From positions 248,001 to 312,000 of the forward strand of contig NW_027272208.1 of the NCBI RefSeq assembly GCF_040938485.1: 64,000 nt of DNA, read 5' to 3'. The number at the start of each line of letters is the position of its first letter. Position 1 is the stretch's first letter. Under the pieces are notes generated by a model, which searched no databases, was not told the DNA's origin, and saw only the letters and a program-made list of their open reading frames with translations. This stretch comes from Diadema antillarum (lineage: Eukaryota). The position numbers and the translations under genes are program-made. Of this stretch, positions 18,370-64,000 are shown one piece after another.

Positions 18370-36163
<17,794 letters not shown>

Positions 36164-38826: not shown

Positions 38827-39760
38827 TAAAAAAAAACCCCAGACAAATAACTACCATCTTGCCCAGATGTAATAACCTTCATTCTGGCCCTCAACCTTGT
38901 TCCAGTGTTAATGAATACATGACATCAGCTTTTGACAAAACCACACAGATTTGAAAAGAGCAAACAAATTGATACCCTCCTTTATCTTTCAAGTTTGATG
39001 AAAGAGGGTGTCTGAGTTATGCAATCACACTCCCTAATAACAAGGCTTTTTACGTCTGTGTCTTCTGGTCCTCTGTTAAGATTTACCCAATAAGCCTGAC
39101 TCACGATCCTTCATTCATACAGCTGTGCAATACAAGGGTTTAAGGTATCACAGTCTACAGAGTTGAATTCCCTGAATGTGCCATGCAAAGCAAGGGGAAG
39201 GCAACATTGTGACAACTTTACCAGCACACTAGTTGATGCCTCTGAGCAAACCAATTCAGAGTGATTCAATTTTCTTAATCATTGTAATTCTGTGTCTGAT
39301 AAGGGGGAAAAAGTGTGTGAATGTTTTCATTGTTCACACACTAGACTGTAGGTGAAGATAATGTCATTTTGGCACAACTTAATTAGTACCTCTAAATCTG
39401 CCTGATGTCATTATGTGATTTTGAATCACAGAATCACTAAAAATATTATGGGCAATATATTTTGAGTTTATGCAGCTTCAGACTTATCGAACCTATCAAT
39501 CAGATGAAGGATGAGGTGATATCATCTAGAATTTTTTTACTCCTGCCAATCACAATACATTTATGCATTATACCAATGCAAACTATGATAAAATCAGATT
39601 TAATATCATACATTTTTCTTTTCAAGGGAGAACCACAAATACTCTAAATCATTCCTCCCACTTCACAATTCAAGAAACTTTCTGTATGGGAAGCAGATAT
39701 ATAATTTTCATCAATGCATAAACTGTTTGATGATCTGTCTTCATCTGGAGAGGGTTGGTC

Positions 39761-42700
39761 TTATGCCTTGCCTGCCTTTTGCATCTCCTGCAGAAATAAA
39801 CAAATAAACAAGCAAACAAATCAATGAATGATTGATCAAACCCCATAAGAACACAGATCAAACTGAAGAAAAGTTTTGATCAAATGTCATTTGATTTCAC
39901 TTGGTAAAAACTCACCATCAGAATATATGCACGCTGAATAAATAACACAGATTTTTACCAGATCACTCTATCAGAATGACATCATTTTCAACACAAACAA
40001 GAAGGCAAAGACAATTTCATTCTAAACATTAGATTTGAAAGTAAAATAAAGAAAAGAAAAGAAAAGAAGTACACCGATTGCACTGATAACTGTTCTCTGC
40101 TCATTGAAGCTATTCACTGAATTGTTTAATGTCACATAATGATTGCTAAACTAATTTTGGTGTGGTTCTGTAGGTGTCCACCATTAATTCTATTCATGCC
40201 TTTTTTTTCCCGTTTTGATTTCCAATTTTTGTTCATCTATTGAAAAGTGGTAACATAACTGCTCAAATGAATATGATGAAATATGTAGCACACAGCTAAT
40301 AGCAGCAATCACACCTGGCATATCAGACTCAATATGCATGTCCATCATCCTCACTGGGTGATATCTGACATCTGAAATGTATTCATGTACATTGCCACAA
40401 TAGTGGTTGCCTAGTCCACAAAAACATATAGTACAGCACTATGACTTCCTTTCATTACACTGAACAACAATTACATGCTGTTTAGTGTGTATTTGATACT
40501 TTAATACACCCATAAGATTCCAAATTCAGTGCTATAAAGTGACTTTTGCAGCTGTGCACAGACTCAAAAAGTGCAACAAAAACAAATATGAAATAAAAAA
40601 AAAAATGATCACAGCAGATGAGGGAAATACCTCTTGAGAATCTTTCACAACTGCAAATTTGAACCCTCTTTATTCACAGAGGAGATCTTTCACTTTGATA
40701 AAGCATACTTGCCACTCAGTCTAGCCAAAGCACAATAAGATCCTTGTGTAACCCGAATGTTACACTCCCGAGTTCATAAATAAAGAATATCACACCTGGG
40801 ATTAAGTTTTGACAAAATAATCCAATGACAAACTTTATTAGCTTGTTTGTCGTTCAACAAAGTACATCACTCAATTCAATTCATTCACAGACTCAATTGT
40901 GACCTTTGCCACATTGGCATAATTAAATATTTGCCAGTGTTCGGCGATAATTCGACTCGTTGCTGTCTCTTTGTTTCTCTCGCCGGTTATCCTGTCGACG
41001 AGCCCAGAGCAGTCACAAACCAGTCGTACACGGTAGCTGATGCAATGCTTAGTAGCTGTCAGTCACGCTGAACCAAGCAAAGGCGGGCCAAAGCTCTCAT
41101 CCAAATATGTATCTAGTCAAAAGAGCCAACACTTGTTTTCACTACAAGTTGCTCCACACGGCAGTCAGTGGATGTACGTGCCACAACCAGTTGTATCACA
41201 GGCACATAAAACTTGTATATAACAGTACAGCTGATGCTTGTAAGGTTTTACCAGTGTTTTGTGGTAAACCTCTCAGCAGATAATATATGTGTGAGAAAAC
41301 TTTCTGGATCACACAGTCGATGTAACAAGCAAAGTGGATGCAGGCCTCAAAGCGCTGGCAGGAAGCAGATATGCCTATTTGCTCCAAAGCTATGGGCTTT
41401 TATACTTTTCTATCTCTATGTAAAATATTGAAATTACAATCTTTCTCTAGAAAATCAGAAACTTCCAGGAAGTTAACTGACCAGCAGAAATTTCATTGGT
41501 TCATGTTTCTATGACATCATTCAAAGTCTGCCTCATTGGCTAGAGGTCACTCATTCCCCTTGACTTCCAGGAACATTACTGACGTACTGACCATCCACTT
41601 GGCCAGACAAAGTCTTAACATTGACCAAGGGCAGTAACGACAGGCTTTCCAGTCACTCTCGAGCATTCTGCCTACAGGGCTTTAAAGTTGCACTCCTGTG
41701 ACCTTGGTCACTGGAGCTGCTGCCTAACCAGCACAGCTATATAACACATTGTTTATACTTATGCAAACACTGATCTACTTAACATAGTAGACAAATCATA
41801 TAGCATAAGTCATAAAAGCACTCAATTAGGATATAGAGACATAATTATATCTCATTTGCATAAATGATGTATTAGACATAACCACTGCACATACATATCT
41901 CTTATGCTGAAGTGCGTGGATCACACTTTGTTCTGAACATATGAGATATCAAATAATAATCTTGCAAACAGTCATACCCCTTACAGTCATTGATAATATA
42001 TAGCACAACAGTATCTGTAACATAAAATGTGACACAGGTAAAGTAAAACTAGTAATGTATGGAGTTACTCTACTTTAAGGCACACGCAAAGATAGCCTAT
42101 TAAACAGTTCATTGGAAATTAGGGGGGGATATGTGAGAAGAAAGGAATAGGAGAGGACAGAATTTGGGCTAGACGTGCACTCTACGTCATTGTCACAGAA
42201 AATGTTGGCCTACAGTTAGAACCAGTCCACTCTGTATAGGCTTTGCCCATGGTGGGACACTGTCTCTAAATCCCAAAGCAACTACTACTTTGTGAATGAC
42301 CTTCCTCTTCTGAGACATGGTCCTTTCGCTTCTCTTGATGTGCCTACACACCAACAAAAGGGAGGGGTGCTTAAAACAATATCCCTAGACTGGCTAGCTT
42401 GCTCTCTCCTTGAGTTTTATTACACCTACATAGTCTAACACCAGCAGGGGCGTTTCACAGGGCTTGACCAGTCTCAATACACACAGGCTTACCATTAGAC
42501 ATTGGCTACTGGGGTCAAAGGCTGGAGGGGGAATCTGAAGACTAATCTTGGGGGTTACTAGTACACTGGTCGAGGGGTTGTTGGAAAACAGGTGGGGTAC
42601 GGACGTCAGAGGAGGGATGAATGGAGGGGGTGGTAATAACAGTGACCATGGGTCTTCCAAGGAAGTAGGAATCTAGTCTGACGACATTTCTGGAGAAATC

Positions 42701-45700
42701 TTAGTAACCCAAATTTTGGTGGGGTTACATCCTCCCCTTTCAAACCAGGGTTCACTCCTGTGAACCTTTGATTAATCAAAACCAAAGATCTTACGCTTAA
42801 GGTCAGCAAAAAATCCTGATGAAGTTGCTTGCCTAGCACCAGAGGGTTCACCAAGGGTATCGTACTGCATGCGTAGCGGCGGCCTTGAAGAGCGAGTCGA
42901 GCGCCTGATGGATTGCGGGGCAGGCTCTGAATCGATTGCTTGATCCGTATTTTGCACTTGCTCTGCCTCAGGCTCTGCTGAAGTATGAGGGGTGTTACCT
43001 CTGGACTCTGTGTCTAGGGGTAAAGGGCTAGTGTGTCTACTTTCTTCTTCCGTGCTCTCCCCTCTCAAATCGGGGACTGCATCATCTGGTGTTACTCTAC
43101 CAGAACTACTGGATGTAACTGTGGCATCTATGCTGATGTCACCGCCAGCATGATTCTCGAAGTCTGAATCGGTTGATGTCTCCTCAGTAATGGGGTCAGG
43201 GGATAAAACGGAACCGCCGGAAACACCTGTGTCACTCACCACATCAGCTGTGTTGACCTGTTCAGGGGTCTCGCTGGTAGTCTCAGAGGGAATATTGGGA
43301 GGTTGGGAGGGGAAAAACTCTGGCGCATTTACGTTAAATCCTGAATGTGGGCGGTTAATGTGCTTGCGTACATCGAAAAGCAGAGTGATTTCTTCGTCAC
43401 TTGAGTCTGAACTATCAGACTCTTCCTCCCTCGGAGGGGCAATGGACTTTTTGGAACGGGTCCGATCAGCTGGACTCCTTTTCTTACCTGGTTTCTGGGT
43501 CTCTGAGTTATGGGCTGGGGCCTCATTCAAATACTCTATGGGTAGGAGAAGGTTGCGGTGTAGGGTGCGTGTCCTACCAATCCCGTCTTCAGGTGCAACT
43601 TCGTAAACCGGCATATCAGGGTTGAGTCGCTTTGTGATGACAAAAGGGTTCGCATACCATCTATCAGCTAATTTCTGCTTACCAGTCAGTCCAACGTTCC
43701 TAACTAGGACGCGATCGCCAGGTTTCAGACCATTGGCTCGCACTTTCGCATCATAGCGGACCTTGTTGGCACTGGCAGACTTGCCGGATGCAGCTGACGC
43801 AAGTTTGTAAGCTCGCGTAAGCTGATCACGCAACCCGCTGACATACTTCACGTGGTCAGTCCCAGTGAAGTTGTCAGGGCTAGTGCCAAATCGCAGATCA
43901 ACAGGCAGCCTAGCTTCCCTACCGAACATGAGGAAATAAGGTGAGAAACCAGTACTGTCATTCCTTGAACAATTGTAAGCGTGTACAAGTGCACTTACGT
44001 ACTTGCTCCAATTTGCCTTCTTCTCCTCCTCCAGGGTCCCTAGCATGTCCAGTAGCGTTCTGTTGAAACGCTCAGGCTGAGGGTCTCCCTGGGGATGGTA
44101 AGGAGTTGTCCTTGATTTCTTAATGCCAAGGAGCCTTGACAGCTCATGGATCACTTTGCTCTCAAAGTCCCTACCTTGATCAGAATGAAGGCGCTGGGGC
44201 AGACCATAATGTACAAAAAAGTTTTCCCACAGGACCTTGGCGACAGTGGCAGCAGTCTGGTCCTTCGTGGGGAAAGCTTGTGCGTATCGTGTGTAGTGAT
44301 CCGTCACTACCAAGATAGACTTCTTATTCGAGCGGTCTGGTTCTAGGGAGAGAAAGTCCATGCAGACCAGCTCCAGGGGGCTGGTTGTGTGAATACTCAC
44401 CAATGGGGCTGCTGGCTTTGGAGGAGTCTTTCTTGCTATACAACGAGGGCAATGCTTGACCCACTCCGTAATGTCAGCACTCATCTTTGGCCAGTAGAAC
44501 CTGTCTCTAGCCAACGCTATGGACTTCTCGATTCCAAGGTGGCCAACACTGTCGTGTATGCCCCTCATTGCCTCGACACGGCGCTGGGCAGGCAATACTA
44601 ACTGGTGATGGCGGTTCCCTAAGGAGTCAGTGAATGTTCTGTAGAGGACTCCTTTGCACAGAACTAGCCTGTCGAACTCGCGGAGTATCAGGGCAACCTC
44701 TCTTGAAAGGCCGGTATAAGACTGCGGCCTCTCCCCACGTTCAACATAATCCCTGACTAGTTTCAGTTGCGGATCTGCCTTTTGAGCCTGTGCCCAGTCT
44801 ACTACATTCAGGTCTGAGCCCTTCGCATACAGACCTGGGATAGACTCTGCACTGGCACACAGGGTCTCAACGTATGGCTGACTTCTATGAGGAGAGTTGG
44901 CTGAAACATAATGCGTCTGACAGAAGGCAGAGAGTGTGGACACTTTCTCACCTGAGTCCGACGTCTCATGCAGCCTTGCTTCCAGATCACTGATCTTGCA
45001 CTGCTGGCGATCCTCAAACTCCTTGTCCAGGCTGGGAGGATGTGGTTTCCTTGACAGCGCATCTGCTTCAATGTTCGTCTTTCCTGGCTTATAATGGATG
45101 GAAAAATCAAAGCAGGAAAGTGCAGCAAGCCATCTATGTCCTGTGGCATCGAGTTTTGCCGACGTCAGGACATATGTTAGTGGGTTATTATCTGTCATAA
45201 CCCGTGTACCTTTTGCTGCATACAAGTAATCCCTGAATTTGTCGGTAACTGCCCACTTTAGAGCAAGAAATTCCAGCTTGTGGGCTGGATAGTTCTTCTC
45301 ACTGTGGGACAGTCCCCGACTTCCATATGTCACTGGACGAAGCTTACCTCCGTGATCTTGATACAGGACACCACCCAGTCCATCACGGCTGGCATCAACA
45401 TGGAGCACAAAAGGCTTTGACAGGTCTGCGAAAGCTAAGACTGGGGCTGTGACCAGACAATGCTTCAAAACCTGAAAAGCCCTCTCACACTCCTCAGTCC
45501 AAGCATCACCAAGGGGGTCACTTGCCTTTCGGGCATCCGGGCTCGGAACTTTCTTTGGAGGTGGACGTCCTCGCTTCCTGGGGTAAACGCACCCACTTGT
45601 AAGTGCGTTCAAAGGGCGGGAAATCTTGGCGTAGTCCTTTATGAATCGCCGGTAATAGCCAGCAAATCCCAGGAAAGACTTAACATGCCTCACTGTCTGT

Positions 45701-48700
45701 GGCCTGGGCCAGGTTCTTACATCGGCCACTTTGTCTGGATCTGTCTGTACCCCAGCCTCGGAGACTACATGACCAAGGTACCTAACCGACTGACAGCAAA
45801 ATTGGCATTTTTCTGGTGATACCTTCAAGCCAAATTGCTGCAGCCTATCCAGCACCCTAGCCAGGCGCTCCTCCATTTCCTCCAGCGTCTTGGAGAAGAT
45901 TATCAGGTCATCCATGTACACCAACACCTCTAACATGTTCAGACCTGACATACACTTCTCCATCAGCCTTTGGAAGGTTGCAGGTGCTCCCTTCACCCCT
46001 TGGGGCATACGCTCGAACTGGTAAAACCCCAAAGGGCAAGTGAAGGCCGTCTTCTCCTTGTCAGATCCACGCATCGGGATTTGATAGAATCCCGACTTTA
46101 AGTCGATAACAGAAAACCATTTACTGCCACTCAGGGAATCAATGGCCTCCTGTATCAGGGGCACTGTGTACTGGTCGGGAATGGTACGAGAATTGAGTGT
46201 ACGGTAGTCGACGCACATTCTCAAAGTACCATTCTTTTTCCGAACCAGCACAATTGGGGAGGCATAGGGACTCTTAGACTCCTTAATGATGTTGTTCTCC
46301 AACAGCTGTTGAAGATGTTGCTGCAAGTCCCTAAGATCAGAGGGAGGCACCCTCCGAGACCTCTCACGGAATGGTGTGTCATCGTTAACACAAATCTGAT
46401 GCTCCGCATAGCCTGTACTGCCTAGGTCAAATTCATGCCTGGAGAACACATCACTCCTCTGCCTGCACTGACTGAGCAGCCTTTCTTTCCACTCCGGGGA
46501 AATCGGGCCCCAATTGATGGGCAGCTCACTAACGTCAACTTGAGGGGAAGGGGTGTTATCGCCTACATTAGCACTTACTTGGGAATGGGTTGCCTTGGTG
46601 TAACTGTGAGGCTGGGTAGGAAAACTACTAGGGGTAGGGAAACACTTGTCGGGGACATAGGCATCTATTATGGGGCAGTTTCCAGGGACAGTGATAGGCT
46701 CAGGGCTACTATTGGTCACCAGCACCCTTACCTTTCCAATCGCACCACCTGACAATTTCTGTACTCCTGGGGCTATGTGTAACCCACTTGGAAGTTTGCT
46801 GTGGGGATTAGACTCTACGAAAACAGTCATCTCTTCTTTCAGGGGATTCCTAATTTGGGCAGTCATTATCAATTTGGAGTGGGGAGGTATTTGCGTGCTA
46901 TGTCCTTTCTTGGTCCTAGCAGTGCCCAATTTGCCATCAGGGGATACCTTCTCTTGTTTTGATATACTGGCATAGATATCCCTGCAAGTCGCACTAATCT
47001 GCAATGACTGGGCGAAGCGTGCTCCAGCCATCCTCCTACAAGATTCAAAACAGTGCCTGAAAAGTCCTGAATTAGTGCCAATAATCACTCTATGGTCACA
47101 GGGACGCTGGGGGTCTGGTACTACAAGAGCCAATGTACTAAACTCAGTCCCTGTGCCAGCAAATGACCGTTCAAAACCTATGTTGACGTAAGCCCAACCC
47201 AGATAGGGCATAGTCCCATCTCCTCCATGGTACAGGACTAGGTCACTCAGTCCATGCAATTCCCTATCTAGTGTGTCGAAAAGGCTCTTGTGTATAAGAG
47301 TGACCTGAGACCCACTATCAAGATGGCATTTTGTCTCCTTTCCATCTATCCAACATTTTGGGTTGATAGCATCTCCTACTAAACCTTCAGGAACATCGTT
47401 CTTGGAAACCTCAACTTTAGAAACAATTGGGGGAGAATCTAATTTTGGGGCCCTTGGTTTCCCCTTCCCAGGCGCCCTTTCTCGTTTCCCTGGTTTCCAA
47501 GGATGTAGTTGACGAGTCTTTTGTTCAGTACGTCAGGGGGGACAGAATTTTGACAATTTCTACTGATATGGCCCTCCTCTCCACACTTGAAGCAAAGAAC
47601 ACCAGTATTATTCTGCTGGGACGACTGAGATTTGGGGGGATTATTGGTGGGTTGAGGTGCTGGTGGAGGTTCTGGTTGGGGAAGGACATGGGGTTGGGAG
47701 GCTGTTTGGGGCGGTAGAATAGAGGGCTCTACCTTACGGTGGGCAGCCTGCTTTGGTTTTGTGCTGACGGGGGGCCTTGGGGCAGACAGAGATTTCTTCA
47801 CTCTCTCCTCTCCTTCCTGCTTCCTCACCGAAGACAGGAGTTCCAGGAAGGACGGTGGTTTCTCCAGGCGCTCCCTGAGCTGTAGGTTTACTAGGAGCAT
47901 TTCATGGTAGAGGATGCCCCTGATGAATTGTCGCAGTCTCACCTTGTTGGCGTCATGTGGCTTGACAACTCCTCGCCTAACCACATGGCGCATGACTTCC
48001 TGTAAGCGAGAAAGATACTCAGAGGGAGACTCACCTTCAGCCTGGACTGTCTGATGAAATCTGACAAACAGTTCATCATCTGTGTCAGTATCGCCAAAAG
48101 CCAGATCCAGAGCCCTGAGGTAGTCTGCAGAGCAGGCCTGGGGATTCTCGCGCCTAAGGTCTGTAATGATGCTTGACGCAGGCGGACGCAATGACTCACG
48201 AATGCGCTTGCGCCGCTCAGCATCATCCAGAGTCTGCCACTCCTCCATCTGGCTCTCAACGTGCTCTATCCAGATGGGGTAGCTATCCTCATCACGCGCT
48301 GCTGTCTTTGCACCGGAGAAGCATCGCAGTTTCCGATACCCTGTGGTCAGCCCACACCGTACTAGTGAAGCTGCTAAAATCGGGATGTCCCGATCAGGGA
48401 AGGACATGGATGGTTCACTGATACCAGGGGAAGGGGGTGGAAGGTTGTTAGTAGTAGGGATGTCTTGAGACTGGACTTCCTGAGCTCTACGTCCTGCTTT
48501 TCTCCATTCCCTAACTAAACCTCTCTCCCTCAGGTCCTTGACACTGACCCTATTTCCTCTGACTGGTCCTAAACCGTCTAACCTCACTACTCTGCACATA
48601 GTCTCCCCATCTACTGGGATGACAATCTGTGCCTGTAGTCCTAACATAGCAACTGCATTTTCAAATTCACACAGGAGCAATGTTTCCCCTGTATCGGGAT

Positions 48701-51700
48701 CATCCCATCTTAACACCTCAAGTAATGTGGGATATAACTCTGACAGTGCCAGTGCAAACACCTCTGTTGGCACAGTCTTTACACCTGTTGCAAGTAGGAG
48801 GGCATTCTCTACTCTAATCTCCTCCTTCTTACACCAATCCTGACCAATCTGCTTCAAACTTTTACCTGCCATCGCTTTGTTTCCTGCACACGAGTGTTGG
48901 CTCTTTGGTACAATAGAACGAAAATGGTGAATGTAACAGTAACAATCAACAATAATAATCAAGACTCAGTTTCGGCAACATGTGTCACCAAACAAATGCA
49001 ATTATACAATTAAGAAAACAATGGTTCCCGGACAAGCCCCCAATTTATGTAACCCGAATGTTACACTCCCGAGTTCATAAATAAAGAATATCACACCTGG
49101 GATTAAGTTTTGACAAAATAATCCAATGACAAACTTTATTAGCTTGTTTGTCGTTCAACAAAGTACATCATTCAATTCAATTCATTCACAGACTCAATTG
49201 TGACCTTTGCCACATTGGCATAATTAAATATTTGCCAGTGTTCGGCGATAATTCGACTCGTTGCTGTCTCTTTGTTTCTCTCGCCGGTTATCCTGTCGAC
49301 GAGCCCAGAGCAGTCACAAACCAGTCGTACACGGTAGCTGATGCAATGCTTAGTAGCTGTCAGTCACGCTGAACCAAGCAAAGGCGGGCCAAAGCTCTCA
49401 TCCAAATATGTATCTAGTCAAAAGAGCCAACACTTGTTTTCACTACAAGTTGCTCCACACGGCAGTCAGTGGATGTACGTGCCACAACCAGTTGTATCAC
49501 AGGCACATAAAACTTGTATATAACAGTACAGCTGATGCTTGTAAGGTTTTACCAGTGTTTTGTGGTAAACCTCTCAGCAGATAATATATGTGTGAGAAAA
49601 CTTTCTGGATCACACAGTCGATGTAACAGGCAAAGTGGATGCAGGCCTCAAAGCGCTGGCAGGAAGCAGATATGCCTATTTGCTCCAAAGCTATGGGCTT
49701 TTATACTTTTCTATCTCTATGTAAAATATTGAAATTACAATCTTTCTCTAGAAAATCAGAAACTTCCAGGAAGTTAACTGACCAGCAGAAATTTCATTGG
49801 TTCATGTTTCTATGACATCATTCAAAGTCTGCCTCATTGGCTAGAGGTCACTCATTCCCCTTGACTTCCAGGAACATTACTGACGTACTGACCATCCACT
49901 TGGCCAGACAAAGTCTTAACATTGACCAAGGGCAGTAACGACAGGCTTTCCAGTCACTCTCGAGCATTCTGCCTACAGGGCTTTAAAGTTGCACTCCTGT
50001 GACCTTGGTCACTGGAGCTGCTGCCTAACCAGCACAGCTATATAACACATTGTTTATACTTATGCAAACACTGATCTACTTAACATAGTAGACAAATCAT
50101 ATAGCATAAGTCATAAAAGCACTCAATTAGGATATAGAGACATAATTATATCTCATTTGCATAAATGATGTATTAGACATAACCACTGCACATACATATC
50201 TCTTATGCTGAAGTGCGTGGATCACACTTTGTTCTGAACATATGAGATATCAAATAATAATCTTGCAAACAGTCATACCCCTTACAGTCATTGATAATAT
50301 ATAGCACAACAGTATCTGTAACATAAAATGTGACACAGGTAAAGTAAAACTAGTAATGTATGGAGTTACTCTACTTTAAGGCACACGCAAAGATAGCCTA
50401 TTAAACAGTTCATTGGAAATTAGGGGGGGATATGTGAGAAGAAAGGAATAGGAGAGGACAGAATTTGGGCTAGACGTGCACTCTACGTCATTGTCACAGA
50501 AAATGTTGGCCTACAGTTAGAACCAGTCCACTCTGTATAGGCTTTGCCCATGGTGGGACACTGTCTCTAAATCCCAAAGCAACTACTACTTTGTGAATGA
50601 CCTTCCTCTTCTGAGACATGGTCCTTTCGCTTCTCTTGATGTGCCTACACACCAACAAAAGGGAGGGGTGCTTAAAACAATATCCCTAGACTGGCTAGCT
50701 TGCTCTCTCCTTGAGTTTTATTACACCTACATAGTCTAACACCAGCAGGGGCGTTTCACAGGGCTTGACCAGTCTCAATACACACAGGCTTACCATTAGA
50801 CATTGGCTACTGGGGTCAAAGGCTGGAGGGGGAATCTGAAGACTAATCTTGGGGGTTACTAGTACACTGGTCGAGGGGTTGTTGGAAAACAGGTGGGGTA
50901 CGGACGTCAGAGGAGGGATGAATGGAGGGGGTGGTAATAACAGTGACCATGGGTCTTCCAAGGAAGTAGGAATCTAGTCTGACGACATTTCTGGAGAAAT
51001 CTTAGTAACCCAAATTTTGGTGGGGTTACACTTGTCAAATGAAACAAAGATACAAACAAACACACACAGTGTTTATCCCACAGAATCTACAAATGAAAAA
51101 AAAAATAAGAAGCAAAACAAGAACAAACTCATACAGTGCTCTGCTCACCTTTAGTATCGTAGTTCCCATCTGTGCTGGCGACATGGTGACGGTTACACCA
51201 GCATCCTTCAGGGCATCAATCTTTTCTGTAGCCCCACCCTTACCCCCTGAGATGATGGCTCCAGCATGGCCCATTCTCCTACCCGGTGGGGCAGTAAGAC
51301 CAGCTATGAATGCAGCGACAGGCTTGGCATTTGGACCCTGCAAACCAATGAGATCAGATCTTCACAGTGTAGAAAAGACATCAATAGACTAATTATCTCT
51401 GTGCTCTTAGTTTTTTTATTTGGAAAGTCAGCTTTTAAACTTGAAAATTATCTTTTTACAAAAAATTGAATCTGTAGTAAAGAGAGCAGTCATTCAGAAT
51501 CAGAGAATGATTAGCATTTAAATTCAAAACATTTCATGACAAATTACAGTAGACTCTTGAACAAATTAGCATGGCACTGCGCTTCACATAACACTTTGTT
51601 TTCACTCACTGTATTGTTTTGCTTGAGGAATTCAGCTGCCTTCTCCTCAGCACCACCACCGATTTCTCCAATGAGCACGATGCCTTCCGTCTCCGGATCC

Positions 51701-53913
51701 TTGAGGAAGATGTCCAGGCAATCCACAAAATTGGTTCCATTGAAAGGATCTCCTCCGATACCTACACTCAAAGGAGAAGGAGAAGAAGAAGAAAAAAAAA
51801 AGAAGTAAGACATTTCAGTACAACTTTCCCTTTCTTTTTGATGAACTTAGTTACCATGGTGACCCATAAAGCCTTCACCTCATAGTTTGTACTTCCTTAT
51901 GTGCAATATCATTTTTCTTTTCCTTTTTTATAATAACAAAATGAGTGCCTTGTTGACTGTTTCATTAAGTCTGCAATACGCACTGGCATTTTCTACAGCA
52001 CTGAAATGTTCTGTTGAAGAATTAGCTCTTCACATTATCCAACAGTAAGCATGACTTGGACTTGATCAGAAGTCTGACCAAATCCAAGAGTGCCTAAAGC
52101 TATAATGCTGCCAGAAAAAATTCTCAAAATCATAATTCTAGACACATTTCTGTCAATCCTTGGGACACCATACAAATAAAAAATAAATGAATAAATAAAA
52201 ATAATCCATCCCTGGGAAACTTTGTTTTGGGTTCCTCAACCCATTTTACACATATAAATGCACTTTCAAGCATTTATTTCTCATTAAGATCATGATAACC
52301 AGGTAGTTCCTTGTTTTCTTATATTAAATTTGTACGACACAATTTGAGTGAGAATGCCTGGAAATCTGCCTTTCTTAATCAAGTACATATCCTTGAAAGA
52401 TATTCAACTTCCATCATCACATTTATAGAGGGCTCTATTCAAATACAAACATATTTCTTTTGTGGTAATACACACTTCTTACTAAAGAGAATTTAGCACG
52501 AAAATGCAAATTTTCCCCCCAAATGACTTTTGATTTTATGAATATTACCAACAAGCACACTTACCAACACAAAGGGTTTGGCCCAGTCCAACAGCTGTCG
52601 TCTGGGCAACGGCTTCATATGTCAAAGTTCCTGACCTCGACACAATACCAATGTTGCCAACTTTATGAATATGTCCAGGCATGATACCAATTTTGCAGCT
52701 TCCAGGCTATAATAGCAATAAAGAGAAAGTAATAAACATTTAATCAAATCTAAAACAAAACACTGATTTTACAAGGGATTGCATCACTTTTGTAAAAAGA
52801 AAAAAAAAAGCCACATTTTGATCACTTCTGTTTTTACCAATGAACAAATACACTCTGCTGTTACATTAAACAAATTTACAATGCGAAACAGCCCTTTTCA
52901 CATCATTCCAAACATACATTTTGTGGCACATAAAACTTCTGAATTCTAATCTAAGAAAAATGACATGCAGGACAACCAGCTAAGATGAGACTCAACATAG
53001 CAATTCTGTGAAATTTCTCAAATTTCTCAAAGGAGAAAATGTGATTCTGATCAAGAAATGTGTCCAGAGTTAAATGGAAGAAAGCAAAGAGTAAAATGCC
53101 TGCTATGAAACCAATTCCAATTTGCTCTAAAGATTGATTTTATGAGTGCTGGGAAACACAGTTTGCCCCATGATATGCTATACATGGGACCCATGAGGTC
53201 AGTCATAAGTAGTCACCAATAAGTAACGTGAAGCCTACACTATGGAATGAGAAAGGTCAATAGTTCATCAACTGATACCTCCAAGGCAGATAAGTTTAGG
53301 ACTCAAACATTTCAATTTCCTCTTGTACAGAAAATGTCACGAGATCTGTATTCACAAGAAGTAGTAACCTGTTACATCTCTTGATAATTTCTGCTAATTT
53401 CTCCATTCTGTGTGAGTGTCGAAAGGGACCTGAAAATGCAGCAGCAGTGAAACAACCAACATACTGCACTGAAAAAAGAAAAGGAAGAAGAGAAATCCAG
53501 TGACTATTGTCAGACATACCTTGATAATACCAGGACAGTTGGGGCCAACAAGGCGTGTCTTGCTCTGTCTGACCAGCTTGTGCTTGACCCGCACCATGTC
53601 CTGCTGGGGGATACCCTCTGTGATGCAGACAACCAGACCGATCTCTGCGTCAATGGCCTCCATTACGGCAGCAGCAGCGAACTGGGCAGGAACATATATG
53701 ACTGATGCATCGCAACCTGTCTTCTCTTTGGCCTGCAGGCAGAATGCAAGGGCAAAATTAAGGATACATGGAGATTGATAGGTGCATAAGCATCTATGAC
53801 AACAACTGCAAACAACTGCCTCTTTGATAAATAAACTTTGAATAGCTCTTGGAACTAAATGCTCTTTCATATTTCAAATGAGGTTTCTCGTTCACACACA
53901 CACACACACACAG

Positions 53914-53950
<37 letters not shown>

Positions 53951-56900
53951 AAATTGGGAAACCTGAAGCTCCATCTCAACCAAAGCTTTACTATCCCTTC
54001 GATTTGTTCCTTAAGACCTGAAAGTCAGTTGGGAAAGCAAATCATCAAGTAGCAGCTCTCGAGCCAACAAATTCTCAGAAGAAAAGACAGGCAGTAGTTG
54101 TAGCTCCTACTGATGATCTTGATATACACTTGTACCAGCAAAGACAGAAAAATTGGATAGTGGAAATAGAATAACTAATGGTCAGACAAAGCAGAACGTG
54201 ATGAGGTTCCATCTGAACAAGAGTACATGTATGTATCATGGTCAAAAAGATGCACACATGTAAGTCATCCAAGGTCAGGGAAACCAAAGGAAATATGTTA
54301 AATACTGTACTAACTACTATACATGCTTTTACATACAACCACAACAGAGGCTCATTCTTTGCACCCTGACAGATATCTGGATCTTCTTATATCAAGGGAA
54401 TGCAGGCAAACTTTAATCTAATCTTAGGGACTAAGCATTCCTTAGTACCCTCCCAAAAACTAAACAAAACAAAACAAGGATAAACAGAAATATTCACAGG
54501 AAAAATGTAGAGGTCTCAGGTAACATGGGTAGTTGCATCTTTTCTAATCTGAACGTAATTTACAGGTCTTACCATTTTTGTGCATTTATGCAAGAAGAAC
54601 ATGCAAGAAAAGCAGGATAATCTCACCTCTTTACATGAATCAAAGACAGGAAGTCCACATGAGACCTGGCCACTCTTTCCTGGGGTAACACCACCTACCA
54701 TGTTGGTCCCATACTCAATGGCTTGTGTGGTGTGGAAAGCACCCTGTAAATATGGGAGTAATAGAATCAATATACAATGAAAGTGGTGATTTTTAAAGAA
54801 AAATGTATGATTAGCACCTGTTTTACAATAAACAAGGTATAACATGACGCAAAACTTTAATTGGCAGTATGAACTGTGATTATAACTGGCAAAATGACTG
54901 TTACCTTTATCTTCTGATGCAAAATCAGTATTCTTTTCAGAGAAAGAGGGGTATGGGATGGTTATGGATGAAGTACACATATATAAGAGTCAACATTCAA
55001 GCATAGGGGATCATTTTGTATAATTTGTAAACTTAGTAATCTGCCAACTGTGCTTTCACTGAGGTCAAAGCTAAATCCAAAGTAAATTCTCTGAGTAAAT
55101 AAGCATGCATTACATAGAGAACATAATGCAAGTCAAATACAGCATTTAGAACTCAGAAAACATAAACACTACAAAATTAGTGTAAAAAAGAAAAGAAAAG
55201 AAATGATAGTTCAGTGATAAGCCAGTGAAATCGTTGTCTTGCATCACCACAGAAATAACCACTCACCTGCTTTCCTGTAATGCCTTGGCAGATGACCTTT
55301 GTGTCTTTTGTGAGGACTAGATTTGCTCTTGACTGTGTGTAGCAGCTTCTAGCTCCAAACTTGGAAAAGGCTAGGTATAATTTTGAACAGCAATGTCAAA
55401 CTGTCATAATCACACATAATTACACATATGAAACAGAACAAGAGCTTACAAATAGAAGTGGAATCATCACATACATGTCCACAGTTCAGGAACTATTCTC
55501 ATTCTCTTGAATTGATGACTACACAATACTTGATGCAATTATCCCTTTATGAAACTCAGCTCATGTGCATATGGCATGGGATTTGGGATGATTTAGGCTG
55601 TGTGCTATGATCTATAAGAAGGTGCCATTTCAACTGATTTGGTTGGTGTATCATTGGGCTCAGATATCATAGAATACCATACATAACTTGGTACATGAAA
55701 AAGATTGTCCTAACATAATTAAGCAATATTTCTTCAACATCATGATCATATTATGACACTAGAGAAGCACTCTGAGAGCACAGACCTCCGCAAAGCAGCT
55801 CATTTCCGGCAATCATCTTGTTCTTCCATAGAGATCAGTGATTTCCACCCATAAGTATGCATGCTAAAAGTCACCCGGATTCCCAATATAAAAGCCTTTT
55901 GTTACGTCATCAACCCTCAGCTGCCCGGCGTGCCCCGCAGTTAGAGCACGCACTTTAGTATGCGTATGAAAACCTCAAAAATGCGCAGCTTGAACTCCCA
56001 AGTTCATTGACCGTACCTGCCAAACTATCAAAAATCCTTCATAAAATCCATTCAAGTTTCCGCATCACTACCAAAATGTTAACATCTGTTCCTTGTGCGA
56101 TTGTGTCATTCTCAACCTTTCCTGCAACATGCCAGTTTCATCTAAATCCGTTCCCAACTTTTTGAGTTATTTTGCACACGGACAAACAAACAAACGGTAT
56201 GCGGTAATGAAAACATATTACCTCCTCCCTTGGCAGAGGTAATTACAAAAGTGTTAAACTGTGTTAGAACTTGTGAACTTGGATTTGGACGTATTTACTT
56301 TAAATCATCTGCATATATCCACTGCACTGCACTGTGTGAGGGAAGCACACTGTCATCACTGACTGCACTGTCAGACTCACAGACATGTTGCTCACACACC
56401 CTACACGAACCTCAATCACTGGGCACTTATCACTGTCAGTTCAGTCACTGCGAACAGGTACAACGCCAAACGGTAGGTAGCTAGGCGAACTAAATCTAAT
56501 TCACATGTAACACATCAACACATCATTGAACTGCCCTCTGTTGAGCAGTTCAAGAGAGCCAAAGAAGCCAATTAAGCATGGCAGAGATTTTTTACTTGCA
56601 CAGTGAGCACCTGTAAATATATCAGTCCGGGAAACCCGCTCATGAGGACCGCTCCCACGTACGAGGACTGCCCCGCCTCATGAGGACCGCCCCCACGCCT
56701 CATGAGGCCCGGGGGGGAACGCGTCATGAGGCCCCCTATTCACTTCTATTCATCTCACATCTGACGTATAAATTGTCGCAACTTTGCACGGTGATTTTTT
56801 GTTACACACACATGTCCACTATCCATGATGAAAAGAAGAAAAAATCCTATCTGTTTTTTTCTTTCAAAAATCGAGTTTTAATCAACCGATGCAGAGCGCC

Positions 56901-61380: not shown

Positions 61381-64000
61381 TAGTGACTTGGGGCTGAAAT
61401 TTTAGATCATTTCATCTCTGTGGTATATAGAGGAGTTATCTCAGTTTCATAAAACAGCCAAAGCTTGCAGATTCCTCAACATCTTTATTGAGAAAAGGAA
61501 TTTATGAGAGCATTTCAGTTGCAAACATGTAGCGTTTAAACAGTGTTGACCTGGAGTTTGGCAAGTGTTATATTAAGTTTTCTGACAAGATGAAAACAAA
61601 GCATCTTTGGTTCACACAGAGTTGCTGTGTGAGTCATTTCAGCTTCAGAGGAAAGTAATAACAACATACCAAAGACTTATGTCGTTTCAGAAGAGGCAGA
61701 AATTGTGATTTACAGTCAACCTTGCCCAAGTTGAATCCAAAAAGATTGGTCAAAATCTTTTGACTTCAATGAATTTCACCTCACACAATGGAATAAACAT
61801 GTGTTTATATCCAGCAGGGTAGAATTTTTCAACTTCACCCATTCTGGATTTGTGCAAGGTCAACACAGGCAAAATTGACTGTATTCCAAGATTTTATCAA
61901 TGCCTTTTACAGTGTGTATGTTGTCTGTGCTGTTAAAGGGAAACCACTGAAATAAAATGATAACTAACTTTGTCACGAGAAAATCTGTCCCCTTACAAAG
62001 TTTGCCAGACATTGATTTATGTGAAGATGTTGACCATCGCCGTGAATACTGTGACGATAGCTCACTACGATTTTCTTTGCGAGACAAGTGATTAATTTGT
62101 TCCACTATCGTCTTATGATTTAGTTTAAAATGTTCTAAGTAATAATAGCAGGATGTCTGAAATACATGTACACTTGTATCTCCATTTATTTTGCTCCACC
62201 TACTCCAGAATACTGTATAAAGTTTGAAACATCCGAAAGACAAATATTCTTTCCAGTGACAGAAAAAAAAAGTCTGTTAACTTACTCTTTGTTTTACTGA
62301 CAATCAAAGTGTGACCACAGTCCTCTAGAGTGAAGATGATTTTGAATGCAGGATTCGGTGGTATACTTTATTAAAGCATTTGTAGATAATTACCTTGTTA
62401 ACTTCCCAGGGGGTGAATAAAAAAGAAGTGGACAACTCTTAGTCAACAGATTACATTGATGTTAACGTCATCAGTGACCATTTCTGGCACACTCCTATTT
62501 CTTTCTTTTTTTCCAACGGCACATATTTCTTGAGATGATAATCATGACTCTGTGAAGCTGAAAATACTTTGTATGTATGACAATGTAAATATCATTTCAT
62601 AAAATATGATGTAATAAATGTACATAATCAACTCTTTTGGGCCTTGAAAATCTGTTAGTTTTGTAATGCTGAGGATGCAAAAGAGTGAAGACAATAATAA
62701 AATAAAAAACATCAAATCACATTTTTAATCCAGTCTTTAATAACTTTATTGCATTTTGCAAAAATGAAAATGTGACCTTACCTCAGTATCTATTACCATT
62801 TGCAATTTATTGCAAGAAATGATATCTTGAACAGAACACTGCATTTAGTTTCCGTGTGTGCACAAAACCTGCCAGTTATATTTGTGGAGGAAATGTACTC
62901 ATTTCACTCCTTCCTATTTTCATTCATATGTCAAAGGTCAGAGGCATTGGACAAACACAAATTAAAGAATTACACAGTGTGGGAGACAACTCCTGAATGA
63001 TATGAGAACATATCTTGTCAATTTGATTTGAAGGTACATGTAGGATGAACTGATAAAAACACACATGTTAGCACACACAAGGTTTGCTATTGGATGATAA
63101 GTGGTCGGAGAGATACAAGGGTGCACTTTTTCATGATGGTTAATTATCCAACATGTGGGCAAACAATGACTCAGTGTGGAGGGCAGCTATTAACACCATT
63201 GTACCTTCATAGACCCTTTACTGTACGTCTGATATGATCACAAAGAACAGAATGAATTCTTCTGACCAGTAAATGACAGACAAAATCAGACTGGAGATTA
63301 GCTTACAGCTTCTTTGTGACCTGGCTGTAACCTCCAGACAGAGTGAGCCTTTATCACTTTGCTTCTTTCCTTCTGCCAAGGAGTTCATGATTTCAAGATT
63401 GCAATCACAAACACAATTTAGCTTCGAGTTCCATTTTCAAATTGTGAGCAACCATGTAGACACGCTGTCTGTTTGGGAGATATTTACTTTCTCTTGTAAG
63501 TGCAATGTACAAACAGTATCTCATTAAGAAGAGATAACAGCTAATTGTTTAACAGACCAAACAAGGCAATCATGTCGAGCCCTATCACTTTCAATATCAT
63601 TCTGTAAAGGTGAACTACATGATACTTCAGGTGGGATCACATACTGCAATGGTAGAAATTTACCCCACAGTGAAAATAACGTTGATTATAAAGCAGCAGA
63701 CCAGAGACATAACGGGTCATGAAATACAATGACCATTTGACCGTTGGTGAATCATGTCTACAATCACAAAGGTGTATGAGATACCTGCCTAGTTACTGTA
63801 GCATCATCACTTGTGTAGAAATTATTTGTGTCCAGCCAGAGAAGACATTACGTTTCTTGATTCTGTTTGATATAACTACCTATCAAAATCTAAAAGGACA
63901 TATGCTTCAAAGTCCTCAATAATCTCCAGCTGAAACATGATGAAAACTACGTACATGTAGTTGTACTTTCCACTGGTTAAGGTAAAATTTACAACATTTT

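What the first reader, a model, noticed from the sequence alone, without database searches (positions are those of the whole stretch)
40743..51034. Complete, near-zero-age Gypsy retrotransposon sitting in sense orientation in the last intron of an essential TCA-cycle gene
Every cis and trans component is intact: TSD, ~2-kb LTRs with only two differences noticed, tRNA-Pro PBS, PPT, gag, frameshift signal and pol. It separates the 27-nt last coding exon of SUCLG1 (39761-39787) from the rest of the gene, enlarging that intron from ~1.1 kb to ~11.4 kb. It begins only ~115 bp from the donor. Sense-orientation LTR insertions in introns are generally selected against, so this is probably a polymorphic, potentially transposition-competent allele. 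Annotation pipelines may truncate SUCLG1 here.
Basis: partly seen in the sequence, partly recalled or inferred. Interest (0 to 1): 0.75.

Follow-up and report, generated by a model that had tools for sequence, protein, structure and literature searches.

The report
Heterozygous young Gypsy insertion in SUCLG1 intron
A complete, evolutionarily young Gypsy-type retrotransposon sits in the last intron of the sea-urchin SUCLG1 gene on only one of the two assembled parental chromosomes, which makes it a well-documented but ordinary transposon insertion polymorphism.

Summary
A 10,284-bp Ty3/Gypsy element lies on the minus strand at 40747-51030. It has 1,983-bp TG..CA LTRs differing at 2 sites, a 4-bp duplication (CTTG), a PBS, a PPT, an open gag with PNMA-type capsid and CCHC knuckle, and G_GGA_AAC slippery sites in a 91-nt -1 overlap. 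Pol is open, with PR-RT-RNaseH-IN.

The element lies in sense in the last intron of SUCLG1, 114 nt below the donor. It separates the 27-nt last coding exon from the rest of the gene.

The genome is most likely Diadema antillarum, whose 1.75-Gb assembly retains both haplotypes. The allelic contig C1240 carries the exact empty site with one CTTG, so the insertion is hemizygous and derived.

LTR divergence (0.10%) is about 1/28 of the local allelic divergence. This copy is not exceptional. Related copies also have 99.5-99.9% LTR pairs, and the one relative tested is also hemizygous. Copies differ by 3-4% with dN/dS 0.10-0.25. No copy more than 97.4% identical was found elsewhere in the assembly.

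This scan had already noted the family (tandem arrays, PNMA-like gag) on other DNA.

The parts
40743..40746 (.). Target-site duplication, copy next to the 3' LTR (CTTG)
   Evidence: Identical to 51031-51034. The allelic contig has a single CTTG at the site.
40747..42729 (-). 3' LTR, 1,983 bp, TG..CA
   Evidence: 99.9% identical to 49048-51030, with 2 mismatches and no gaps.
42730..42741 (-). Polypurine tract GAAAGGGGAGGA abutting the 3' LTR
   Evidence: Read directly from the sequence. Invariant in 14 related copies.
42772..47532 (-). pol open frame (1,586 codons, -1 relative to gag): protease (LDSG), RT (YMDD), RNase H, integrase (HHCC, DD35E), and a long C-terminal tail of about 400 aa without a domain
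   Evidence: Pfam hits: RVT_1 5e-40, RT_RNaseH_2 3e-30, Integrase_H2C2 8e-18, rve 6e-15. Asp_protease_2 is only 1e-3, below Pfam's cutoff. Motifs. The best solved relative is Ty3 Gag-Pol 7q5b at 1.4e-102.
47439..48872 (-). gag ORF, 477 aa, with a PNMA-type capsid domain and a CCHC zinc knuckle
   Evidence: Pfam PNMA 6e-38 and zf-CCHC 8e-7. PDB PNMA2 8uyo 1e-28. The exact sequence is on record at NCBI, and its cluster-mates are named 'paraneoplastic antigen Ma3-like'.
47484..47490 (-). Slippery heptamer G_GGA_AAC in the gag frame, followed after 6 nt by a G+C-rich hairpin (about 47477-47447)
   Evidence: It is conserved in 13 of 14 relatives. The hairpin folds no better than shuffled sequence, so its role is inferred.
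47457..47463 (-). Second in-frame G_GGA_AAC heptamer inside the gag/pol overlap
   Evidence: Conserved in all 14 relatives.
49026..49042 (-). Primer-binding site, 17 nt, 5 nt downstream of the 5' LTR
   Evidence: Its complement plus a T-loop context occurs 142 times in the genome against 12 for the control, in tRNA-like clusters. Invariant in 14 relatives. The tRNA-Pro assignment comes from general knowledge.
49048..51030 (-). 5' LTR, 1,983 bp. It carries AATAAA hexamers in gene sense at 50722 and 49140 and a TATAAAA at 49705
51031..51034 (.). Target-site duplication, copy next to the 5' LTR (CTTG)
51149..51337 (-). SUCLG1 penultimate coding exon (63 codons); GT donor at 51148-51147
   Evidence: Aligns to residues 235-297 of the 305-residue human SCS-alpha chain at 1.2e-27, leaving 8 residues. 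Pfam Ligase_CoA. Only two places in the genome, both 100% identical at protein level.
39761..39787 (-). Putative last SUCLG1 coding exon, EMQKAGKA plus stop, behind a pyrimidine tract and CAG
   Evidence: It has the same length as the 8 residues that remain in the human chain. It is 27/27 identical on the other haplotype. There is no RNA evidence.
51610..51762 (-). SUCLG1 exon (approximate borders), Ligase_CoA
52560..52706 (-). SUCLG1 exon (approximate borders)
53478..53741 (-). SUCLG1 exon (approximate borders), CoA_binding
   Evidence: Two further upstream exons lie near 54590-54700 and 55200-55290.

Best explanation
This is a hemizygous, evolutionarily recent insertion of an autonomous Ty3/Gypsy (Metaviridae) LTR retrotransposon with a PNMA-type Gag. 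The genome is most likely that of the sea urchin Diadema antillarum.

Shown:
- the full anatomy of the element;
- open gag and pol frames with the catalytic motifs;
- a 4-bp target duplication;
- the exact empty site on the allelic contig of the same assembly;
- sense orientation in the last intron of single-copy SUCLG1.

Inferred life cycle:
- transcription starts in the 5' LTR;
- Gag-Pol is made by -1 ribosomal frameshifting at G_GGA_AAC;
- minus-strand DNA synthesis is primed by a host tRNA (Pro-type) on the 17-nt PBS, and plus-strand synthesis from the PPT;
- integrase makes a staggered 4-bp cut.

The family behaves as a set of long-lived, selectively maintained lineages. These lineages are shared with D. 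setosum and keep producing rare, young insertions. This copy is one of them, and it is the only representative of its lineage in this individual.

Inferred effect on the host gene: the carrier allele may lose some SUCLG1 message. This could happen through premature polyadenylation at the sense LTR hexamers (426 and 2,008 nt past the donor) or through poorer removal of an 11.4-kb intron. The empty allele covers the function.
For: Anatomy.

Empty site:
- The left flank ends at C1240:399001 and the right flank starts at C1240:398998.
- Read directly, L047 shows a single CTTG between flanks that are 96.1-96.5% identical to the window.

C1240 is the allele:
- It is colinear with window 20005-31294.
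- The SUCLG1 exon occurs exactly twice in the genome, with only synonymous differences.
- The assembly statistics match the published D. antillarum assembly, which is stated to retain both haplotypes: 84.4% of BUSCO genes duplicated, 2.52% heterozygosity (PMC13511894).

Species: the exact gag is on record and clusters with Diadema proteins.

Age: 2/1,983 LTR differences against 2.6-3.3% substitutions between the haplotypes in the flanks.

Family:
- Other LTR pairs are 99.5-99.9% identical.
- The C1106 copy is also hemizygous, with a 4-bp overlap at its empty site.
- Internal regions are 95.8-97.4% identical to this copy.
- dN/dS between copies is 0.10-0.25.
- PBS, PPT and the slippery sites are conserved across copies.
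- Gag variants are intermixed between the two Diadema species.

Classification: Ty3 1.4e-102 and PNMA2 1e-28.
Against:
- No source copy above 97.4% identity was found in either haplotype. The searches score only the best candidates, so this is a lower bound.
- The protease is detected only weakly (E 1e-3, below Pfam's cutoff).
- The hairpin after the slippery site is no more stable than shuffled sequence.
- The 8-codon last exon is supported only by splice-site logic, its length and its identity on the other haplotype. Identity over 27 nt is expected about one time in four by chance.
- The species assignment is indirect.
Confidence: 0.85

Rival explanations
1. C1240 is a paralogous segmental duplicate, not the allele. 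The insertion would then be fixed in one of two SUCLG1 gene copies rather than polymorphic.
For: An earlier preprint on the same assembly read the twofold content as past duplication. Local identity including gaps (96.1-96.5%) is slightly below what 2.52% heterozygosity suggests.
Against: The later peer-reviewed analysis shows retained haplotypes. Each phased haplotype is about 0.9 Gb, the genome is diploid by Smudgeplot, and 84.4% of BUSCO genes are duplicated. Substitution-only divergence in the flanks is 2.6-3.3%, close to the genome-wide figure. Exon differences are all synonymous. A second family member shows the same occupied/empty pairing on another contig pair.
Confidence: 0.05
2. The insertion is much older than its LTRs suggest. 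LTR-LTR gene conversion has kept the LTRs alike, and the occupied and empty alleles are a long-lived polymorphism.
For: Every examined copy of the family has 99.5-99.9% LTR identity although copies differ from each other by 3-6%. This pattern would also follow from pervasive intra-element conversion.
Against: dN/dS of 0.10-0.25 between copies shows that their divergence arose in replicating lineages, not by decay in place. The open frames have no lesion over 6.3 kb. Both tested copies are absent from the other haplotype, as expected for rare young insertions.
Confidence: 0.05
3. Assembly artefact: a Gypsy copy from elsewhere was spliced into contig C1320 by mis-joined long reads.
For: The family has many similar copies. 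HiFi depth is low (about 11x per haplotype) and mean read length (6.8 kb) is shorter than the element. No reads could be examined.
Against: A chimeric join would not create a perfect 4-bp duplication of exactly the bases found once at the empty site. Nor would it give an internal sequence and LTRs that match no other copy above 97.4%.
Confidence: 0.03

Closest known systems
Ty3 of Saccharomyces cerevisiae and Ty3/Gypsy (Metaviridae) LTR retrotransposons in general
   Same: LTR-PBS-gag-pol-PPT-LTR layout. Pol order is PR-RT-RNaseH-IN. Gag-Pol is made through a programmed frameshift. The target duplication is short. Ty3 Gag-Pol (7q5b) is the best solved match, at 1.4e-102.
   Different: The LTRs are much longer (1,983 bp). 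The predicted frameshift is -1 at G_GGA_AAC, whereas Ty3 uses +1 (general knowledge). The PBS is of tRNA-Pro type rather than initiator-tRNA-Met type (general knowledge). The capsid is of PNMA type. The integrase has a tail of about 400 aa with no recognisable domain.
Mammalian PNMA genes (PNMA2, MOAP1), which are domesticated Gypsy gag genes
   Same: The gag capsid domain matches Pfam PNMA at 6e-38 and the PNMA2 capsid structures at 1e-28.
   Different: Here the gag is part of a complete mobile element with pol, LTRs and a CCHC knuckle. It is multi-copy and polymorphic in position. It is not a host gene, although NCBI names it 'paraneoplastic antigen Ma3-like'.
PEG10 and the Sushi-type Gypsy lineage
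   Same: An identical G_GGA_AAC slippery heptamer in a gag/pol -1 overlap. That PEG10 uses this heptamer is from general knowledge; the heptamer here is.
   Different: The gag belongs to the PNMA family rather than the PEG10/RTL family. Frameshifting here is not demonstrated.
Sense-oriented intronic LTR-element insertions that disturb host genes (mouse IAP and ETn alleles)
   Same: A full-length LTR element lies in sense in an intron, close to a splice donor, and carries polyadenylation hexamers in the gene's direction.
   Different: No transcript evidence exists here. The allele is heterozygous in a wild animal, and no phenotype is known.
Shared-LTR tandem arrays of the same family elsewhere in this genome (scan note s1-208710)
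   Same: Same family. Internal regions are 96.7% identical, and the PBS, PPT and slippery sites are the same.
   Different: Array units have about 3.1-kb LTRs with an extra 1.09 kb or so at LTR position about 1620. They also have broken pol frames. The window copy is a single short-LTR unit with open frames.

Membership tests
Ty3/Gypsy (Metaviridae) LTR retrotransposon | Two direct LTRs ending TG..CA, flanked by a short target-site duplication | tested here: met
   1,983-bp LTRs and a CTTG duplication. Four-bp duplications are also seen in three relatives.
Ty3/Gypsy (Metaviridae) LTR retrotransposon | Pol domain order protease, RT, RNase H, integrase (integrase last) | tested here: met
   In the 1,495-aa ORF numbering: RVT_1 339-498, RNase H 587-717, integrase 890-1056. 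In the 1,586-codon open frame: protease LDSG at about residue 71, with only a weak Pfam hit.
Ty3/Gypsy (Metaviridae) LTR retrotransposon | RT/RNase H closest to Ty3/Gypsy rather than to Copia, BEL or retroviruses | tested here: met
   Ty3 7q5b at 1.4e-102 and 4ol8 at 3.4e-76. The next hits are a caulimovirus-type polyprotein and retroviruses, at 1e-42 or weaker.
Ty3/Gypsy (Metaviridae) LTR retrotransposon | PBS complementary to a host tRNA 3' end next to the 5' LTR, and a PPT next to the 3' LTR | tested here: met
   The 17-nt PBS equals the complement of host tRNA-like 3' halves plus CCA (142 hits against 12 for the control). PPT. The anticodon identity (Pro) was not tested, because no loci could be cut.
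Ty3/Gypsy (Metaviridae) LTR retrotransposon | Gag-Pol produced by programmed frameshifting | not testable with these tools
   The sequence signals are present and conserved. The stimulatory structure is not significant. Proof would need a protein or reporter assay.
Chromoviruses (Gypsy with an integrase chromodomain) | Chromodomain at the integrase C-terminus | tested here: not met
   No chromodomain was found in the 396-aa tail at E up to 5. The atlas leads are generic integrase C-terminal families.
Errantivirus-like Gypsy with env | A third ORF (env) between pol and the 3' LTR | tested here: not met
   The pol stop at 42772 lies 42 nt from the LTR. There is no other sense ORF of 100 aa or more.
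PNMA-type Gag | PNMA capsid domain above Pfam's gathering score | tested here: met
   130 bits against a cutoff of 25. PNMA2 structures at 1e-28.
Polymorphic (non-fixed) insertion | An allele with the unoccupied site and a single copy of the target bases | tested here: met
   L047 (C1240) reads ..GATC CTTG TCAAATG... Population frequency was not tested.
SUCLG1 (succinate-CoA ligase alpha subunit) | CoA_binding and Ligase_CoA domains, with closest similarity to mitochondrial SCS-alpha | tested here: met
Exon by exon: (human and pig SCS-alpha at 1e-27 for a single exon).
SUCLG1 (succinate-CoA ligase alpha subunit) | The 27-nt exon at 39761-39787 is the true last coding exon | tested here: inconclusive
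   The acceptor, the phase and the 8-residue length fit, and the exon is identical on the other haplotype. No RNA or orthologue evidence could be obtained.

The most novel reading that the evidence does not exclude
The occupied allele is a naturally segregating hypomorph of a single-copy TCA-cycle gene in a keystone reef species. It would be caused by premature polyadenylation or mis-splicing in a sense-oriented LTR. The element would belong to a still-active PNMA-type Gypsy family whose several lineages have been kept under purifying selection since before D. antillarum and D. setosum split. That would make the family a living counterpart of the elements that gave rise to the mammalian PNMA capsid genes.
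Probability: 0.2. Interest if true: 0.45.

Novelty: new member of a known kind. Interest (0 to 1): 0.27.

Why it matters
- **Annotation.** The gag ORFs of this family are deposited as host genes ('paraneoplastic antigen Ma3-like'). A 10-kb element inside the last intron can make gene predictors drop the 8-codon terminal exon of SUCLG1.
- **Biology.** This is a clean, fully resolved occupied/empty allele pair in a highly heterozygous marine invertebrate. It shows that the family has inserted recently. It also offers a natural test of how a sense-oriented LTR element in an intron affects an essential gene.
- **Limits.** None of this is unexpected. Insertion polymorphisms of young LTR elements are common in outbred invertebrates.

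Tried and rejected
- **Reads and RNA.** Junction depth, population frequency, SUCLG1 splicing and element expression are therefore untested.
- **NCBI gene model.** The look-up of encoding contigs with the exact gag returned nothing, because records of the window's own genome are left out. NCBI's SUCLG1 model could not be seen.
- **Fetching loci.** The middle of the C1106 copy, the tRNA-like loci and more of C1240 could not be fetched. Later genome searches gave coordinates only.
- **tRNA context for the PBS.** A first pattern built on a remembered vertebrate T-loop found nothing. A looser T-loop pattern did find matches.
- **tRNA genes.** ARAGORN found no tRNA gene in the window or in 29 loci.
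- **Frameshift hairpin.** The fold downstream of the slippery sites is not better than shuffled sequence.
- **Spliced protein.** The joined SUCLG1 protein was not built or searched. Exons were searched one by one.
- **Rejected readings.** Assembly collapse of the LTRs is rejected because they differ at 2 sites and the TSD and empty site are exact. A chromovirus or env-bearing element is rejected because neither domain nor ORF is present. SURL, the classical sea-urchin Gypsy, is rejected from general knowledge because it is far smaller and has one ORF.


Full report
**What is in the sequence**

A self-comparison of 39000-52500 gives a single long direct repeat, 40744-42729 against 49045-51030, at 99.85% identity without gaps. 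Base-by-base reading places the LTRs at 40747-42729 and 49048-51030. Each is 1,983 bp, begins TGTAAC and ends TTACA.

- Inside the LTRs there are two differences, both transitions: 40870 C / 49171 T and 41328 A / 49629 G.
- The third mismatch in the BLAST hit lies in the flank.
- The four bases outside each end are CTTG (40743-40746 and 51031-51034).
- The count of 'two differences' is exact.

**Orientation and coding capacity**

The element reads on the minus strand.

- Five bases after the 5' LTR comes TGGGGGCTTGTCCGGGA (49042-49026).
- Immediately before the 3' LTR comes GAAAGGGGAGGA (42741-42730).
- gag is open from the ATG at 48872 to the stop at 47439 (477 aa).
- pol is open from 47532 to 42772 (1,586 codons) in the -1 frame, overlapping gag by 91 nt.
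- In that overlap, in the gag frame, lie two G_GGA_AAC heptamers (47490-47484 and 47463-47457).
- The first heptamer is followed after 6 nt by a G+C-rich hairpin. Its predicted stability is no better than shuffled sequence, so I treat it as an inference only.

Pfam results for the two proteins:

| Protein | Family | E-value |
|---|---|---|
| gag | PNMA | 6e-38 |
| gag | zf-CCHC | 8e-7 |
| pol | RVT_1 | 5e-40 |
| pol | RT_RNaseH_2 | 3e-30 |
| pol | RT_RNaseH | 3e-28 |
| pol | Integrase_H2C2 | 8e-18 |
| pol | rve | 6e-15 |
| pol | Asp_protease_2 | 1e-3 (below cutoff) |

The motifs LDSG, YMDD, HHCC and DD35E are all present. The closest solved proteins are Ty3 Gag-Pol (7q5b, 1.4e-102) for pol and the PNMA2 capsid (8uyo, 1e-28) for gag. 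There is no env ORF and no chromodomain. The roughly 400 residues after the integrase core carry no recognisable domain.

**The host gene**

On the same strand, open segments upstream of the element carry the hallmark peptides of succinate-CoA ligase alpha. Searched exon by exon, they hit CoA_binding and Ligase_CoA. The exon 51337-51149 aligns over all 63 codons to residues 235-297 of the 305-residue human mitochondrial chain (1.2e-27), leaving eight residues.

- That exon ends AAG|GTGAGC, with the donor at 51148-51147, 114 nt from the TSD.
- At 39787-39761, behind a pyrimidine tract and CAG, lie eight codons and a stop, EMQKAGKA*.
- The phase and the length fit. The exon is 27/27 identical on the other haplotype, but that is weak evidence at this length.
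- I could not obtain RNA or orthologue support, so the terminal exon is probable, not proven.
- Two more exons lie upstream, near 54.6 and 55.3 kb.
- The mortalin gene follows downstream on the same strand.
- The intron is 11,361 bp with the element and about 1,073 bp without it.

**Whose genome**

The exact 477-aa gag is on record at NCBI. Its 90% cluster consists of proteins named 'paraneoplastic antigen Ma3-like' from Diadema antillarum and D. setosum. The assembly (1.7547 Gb, 2,963 contigs) matches the published D. antillarum assembly (1.73-1.75 Gb, 2,964 scaffolds).

The later paper shows that this assembly retains both parental haplotypes (PMC13511894):
- 84.4% of BUSCO genes are duplicated;
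- the phased haplotypes are about 0.9 Gb each;
- heterozygosity is 2.52%.

The species assignment is an inference from these two matches.

**The empty allele**

Searching the genome with the two flanks finds one other place for each, on contig C1240. The left flank ends at 399001 and the right flank begins at 398998. Read directly (L047), the site is ..AAGATC CTTG TCAAATGAAAC.., with a single CTTG and no LTR remnant.

Several results show that C1240 is the allele:
- The flanks are 96.1-96.5% identical (2.6-3.3% substitutions).
- C1240 is colinear with the window for at least another 11 kb further along.
- The SUCLG1 exon occurs exactly twice in the genome, at C1320 and C1240, with identical protein.

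LTR elements do not excise cleanly. The empty form is therefore ancestral and the insertion is derived and hemizygous in the sequenced animal.

**Age**

LTR divergence is 2/1,983 = 0.10% (Poisson 95% range 0.012-0.36%). Both LTR divergence and allelic divergence measure twice the mutation rate times time. The insertion is therefore about 4% (0.4-13%) as old as the common ancestor of the two haplotypes at this locus.

In absolute terms, T = 0.0005 divided by the per-site rate. No rate is known for Diadema. An assumed 5e-9 per year would give about 100,000 years. 'Young' is justified; 'near-zero' overstates it.

**The family**

The genome holds many relatives (211 and 149 first-look candidates).

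- *No close copy.* None is close to this copy. Internal regions are 95.8-97.4% identical, the LTRs are at most 95% identical, and the last 363 bp of the LTR is at most 97% identical. Only the best candidates are scored, so this is a lower bound. Near-identical copies would have ranked first.
- *LTR variants.* Most relatives have LTRs of about 3.1 kb, with an extra 1.09 kb or so at LTR position about 1620. Among the scored matches, only the window copy and one at C1106 have the full short LTR.
- *Other copies are equally young.* LTR pairs at C1106, C108, C63, C383 and C350 are 99.5-99.9% identical.
- *Another hemizygous copy.* The C1106 copy is also hemizygous. Its flanks meet with a 4-bp overlap on contig C1683.
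- *Target duplications.* They are 4 bp wherever they are readable.
- *Frame status.* Some relatives keep both frames open. One has gag and pol fused by a 1-nt insertion. The units of the tandem arrays at C447 and C137 have broken pol.
- *Selection.* Between copies, dN/dS is 0.10-0.25 in both gag and pol. The 3-4% that separates lineages therefore accumulated while they were replicating under selection, not by decay in place.
- *Conserved signals.* The PBS, the PPT and the slippery heptamers are conserved across the 14 aligned copies, except the first heptamer in one copy.
- *Cross-species pattern.* Gag proteins from D. setosum are no further from this copy (18-21 differences) than those from D. 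antillarum (14-21). The matrix is star-like. This suggests that several lineages predate the species split. I did not test this with a rooted tree.

**PBS**

A pattern joining a generic T-loop to the complement of the PBS finds 142 places in the genome against 12 for the reversed control. There are 32 exact matches reading GTTC(R)A(Y)TCCCGGACAAGCC, many in tight clusters as tRNA genes are. The PBS therefore pairs perfectly with a host tRNA-like 3' end plus CCA. That this tRNA is tRNA-Pro follows from the near-identity of that 3' end to textbook tRNA-Pro. No anticodon could be read, because no more loci could be cut.

**Likely consequences for SUCLG1 (inferred)**

The sense LTR brings AATAAA hexamers 426 and 2,008 nt downstream of the donor. 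Known sense-oriented intronic LTR insertions in mice act through such signals and through cryptic splicing (general knowledge). A transcript that fails to splice would add 37 intron-encoded residues and stop at the TGA at 51037-51035, just before the insertion, on either allele. The gene is single-copy, and the other allele is intact. Nothing here shows that expression is actually affected.

**What could not be done**

As a result there is no read support for the junctions, no population frequency, no splice evidence and no element RNA. The look-up of the locus in public annotation leaves out the window's own genome.

**Verdict**

The insertion is a real, complete, young, hemizygous Gypsy insertion in sense in the last intron of SUCLG1. 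It is also ordinary. The family has several equally young copies, another tested copy is likewise hemizygous, and the same window holds other very young repeats that appear to differ between the haplotypes. The scan had already met this family on other DNA (s1-208710, s1-224793). I rate it a new member of a known kind, of modest interest.

Noticed in passing
L047:3247-3396 (allelic contig C1240), corresponding to window ~51349-51355: The empty-site haplotype carries an extra ~150 bp only 12-18 nt upstream of the acceptor of the penultimate SUCLG1 exon. The window haplotype lacks it. This is a second structural difference between the two SUCLG1 alleles, close to a splice site.
   Followed up: partly
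window 22838-24412: A 1.57-kb repeat has 99-100% identical copies on many contigs. C1240 seems to have only about 400 bp at the corresponding place, so this may be another very young insertion polymorphism.
   Followed up: no
window 34403-35799: A 1.4-kb foldback element in the mortalin intron has dozens of 98-100% identical copies genome-wide, each matching on both strands. The scan already noted it as s1-224792.
   Followed up: no
G000 C447:647083-692808 and C137:553122-592301 (L002-L009, L014, L020-L031): These are head-to-tail arrays of at least five units of the long-LTR subfamily, with a 9,391-bp period, shared LTRs and units 99.7-100% alike. All units carry the same pol lesions. The two arrays are probably the two alleles of one locus.
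   Followed up: partly
L001 (G000 C383:311467-321466): One relative has gag and pol in a single 2,064-codon frame. A 1-nt insertion just after the hairpin causes this, and its first slippery heptamer is changed to GGGAAAG.
   Followed up: partly
window 47439-48872 and cluster P0001-P0011: NCBI annotation names the gag ORFs of this transposon family 'paraneoplastic antigen Ma3-like' or 'Ma3 homolog' in both Diadema species, as if they were host genes.
   Followed up: yes
window 42775-43962 (minus): The pol tail of about 400 aa after the integrase core has no domain. A PAM2-like motif scores just below Pfam's cutoff (E 0.002, 18.1 bits against 20). The atlas leads are generic integrase C-terminal families.
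   Followed up: partly
window 62058-64000: A small contig (C2613:5334-7279) matches this stretch at 99%, higher than the allelic contig elsewhere. It may be a redundant assembly fragment.
   Followed up: no
L018/L019 flanks (G000 C1106) and many other contigs: The C1106 Gypsy copy sits inside a ~1.1-kb dispersed repeat with over 2,000 first-look candidates. Unoccupied copies of that repeat show the two halves adjoining with the same 4-bp overlap. The TSD there is also CTTG.
   Followed up: partly
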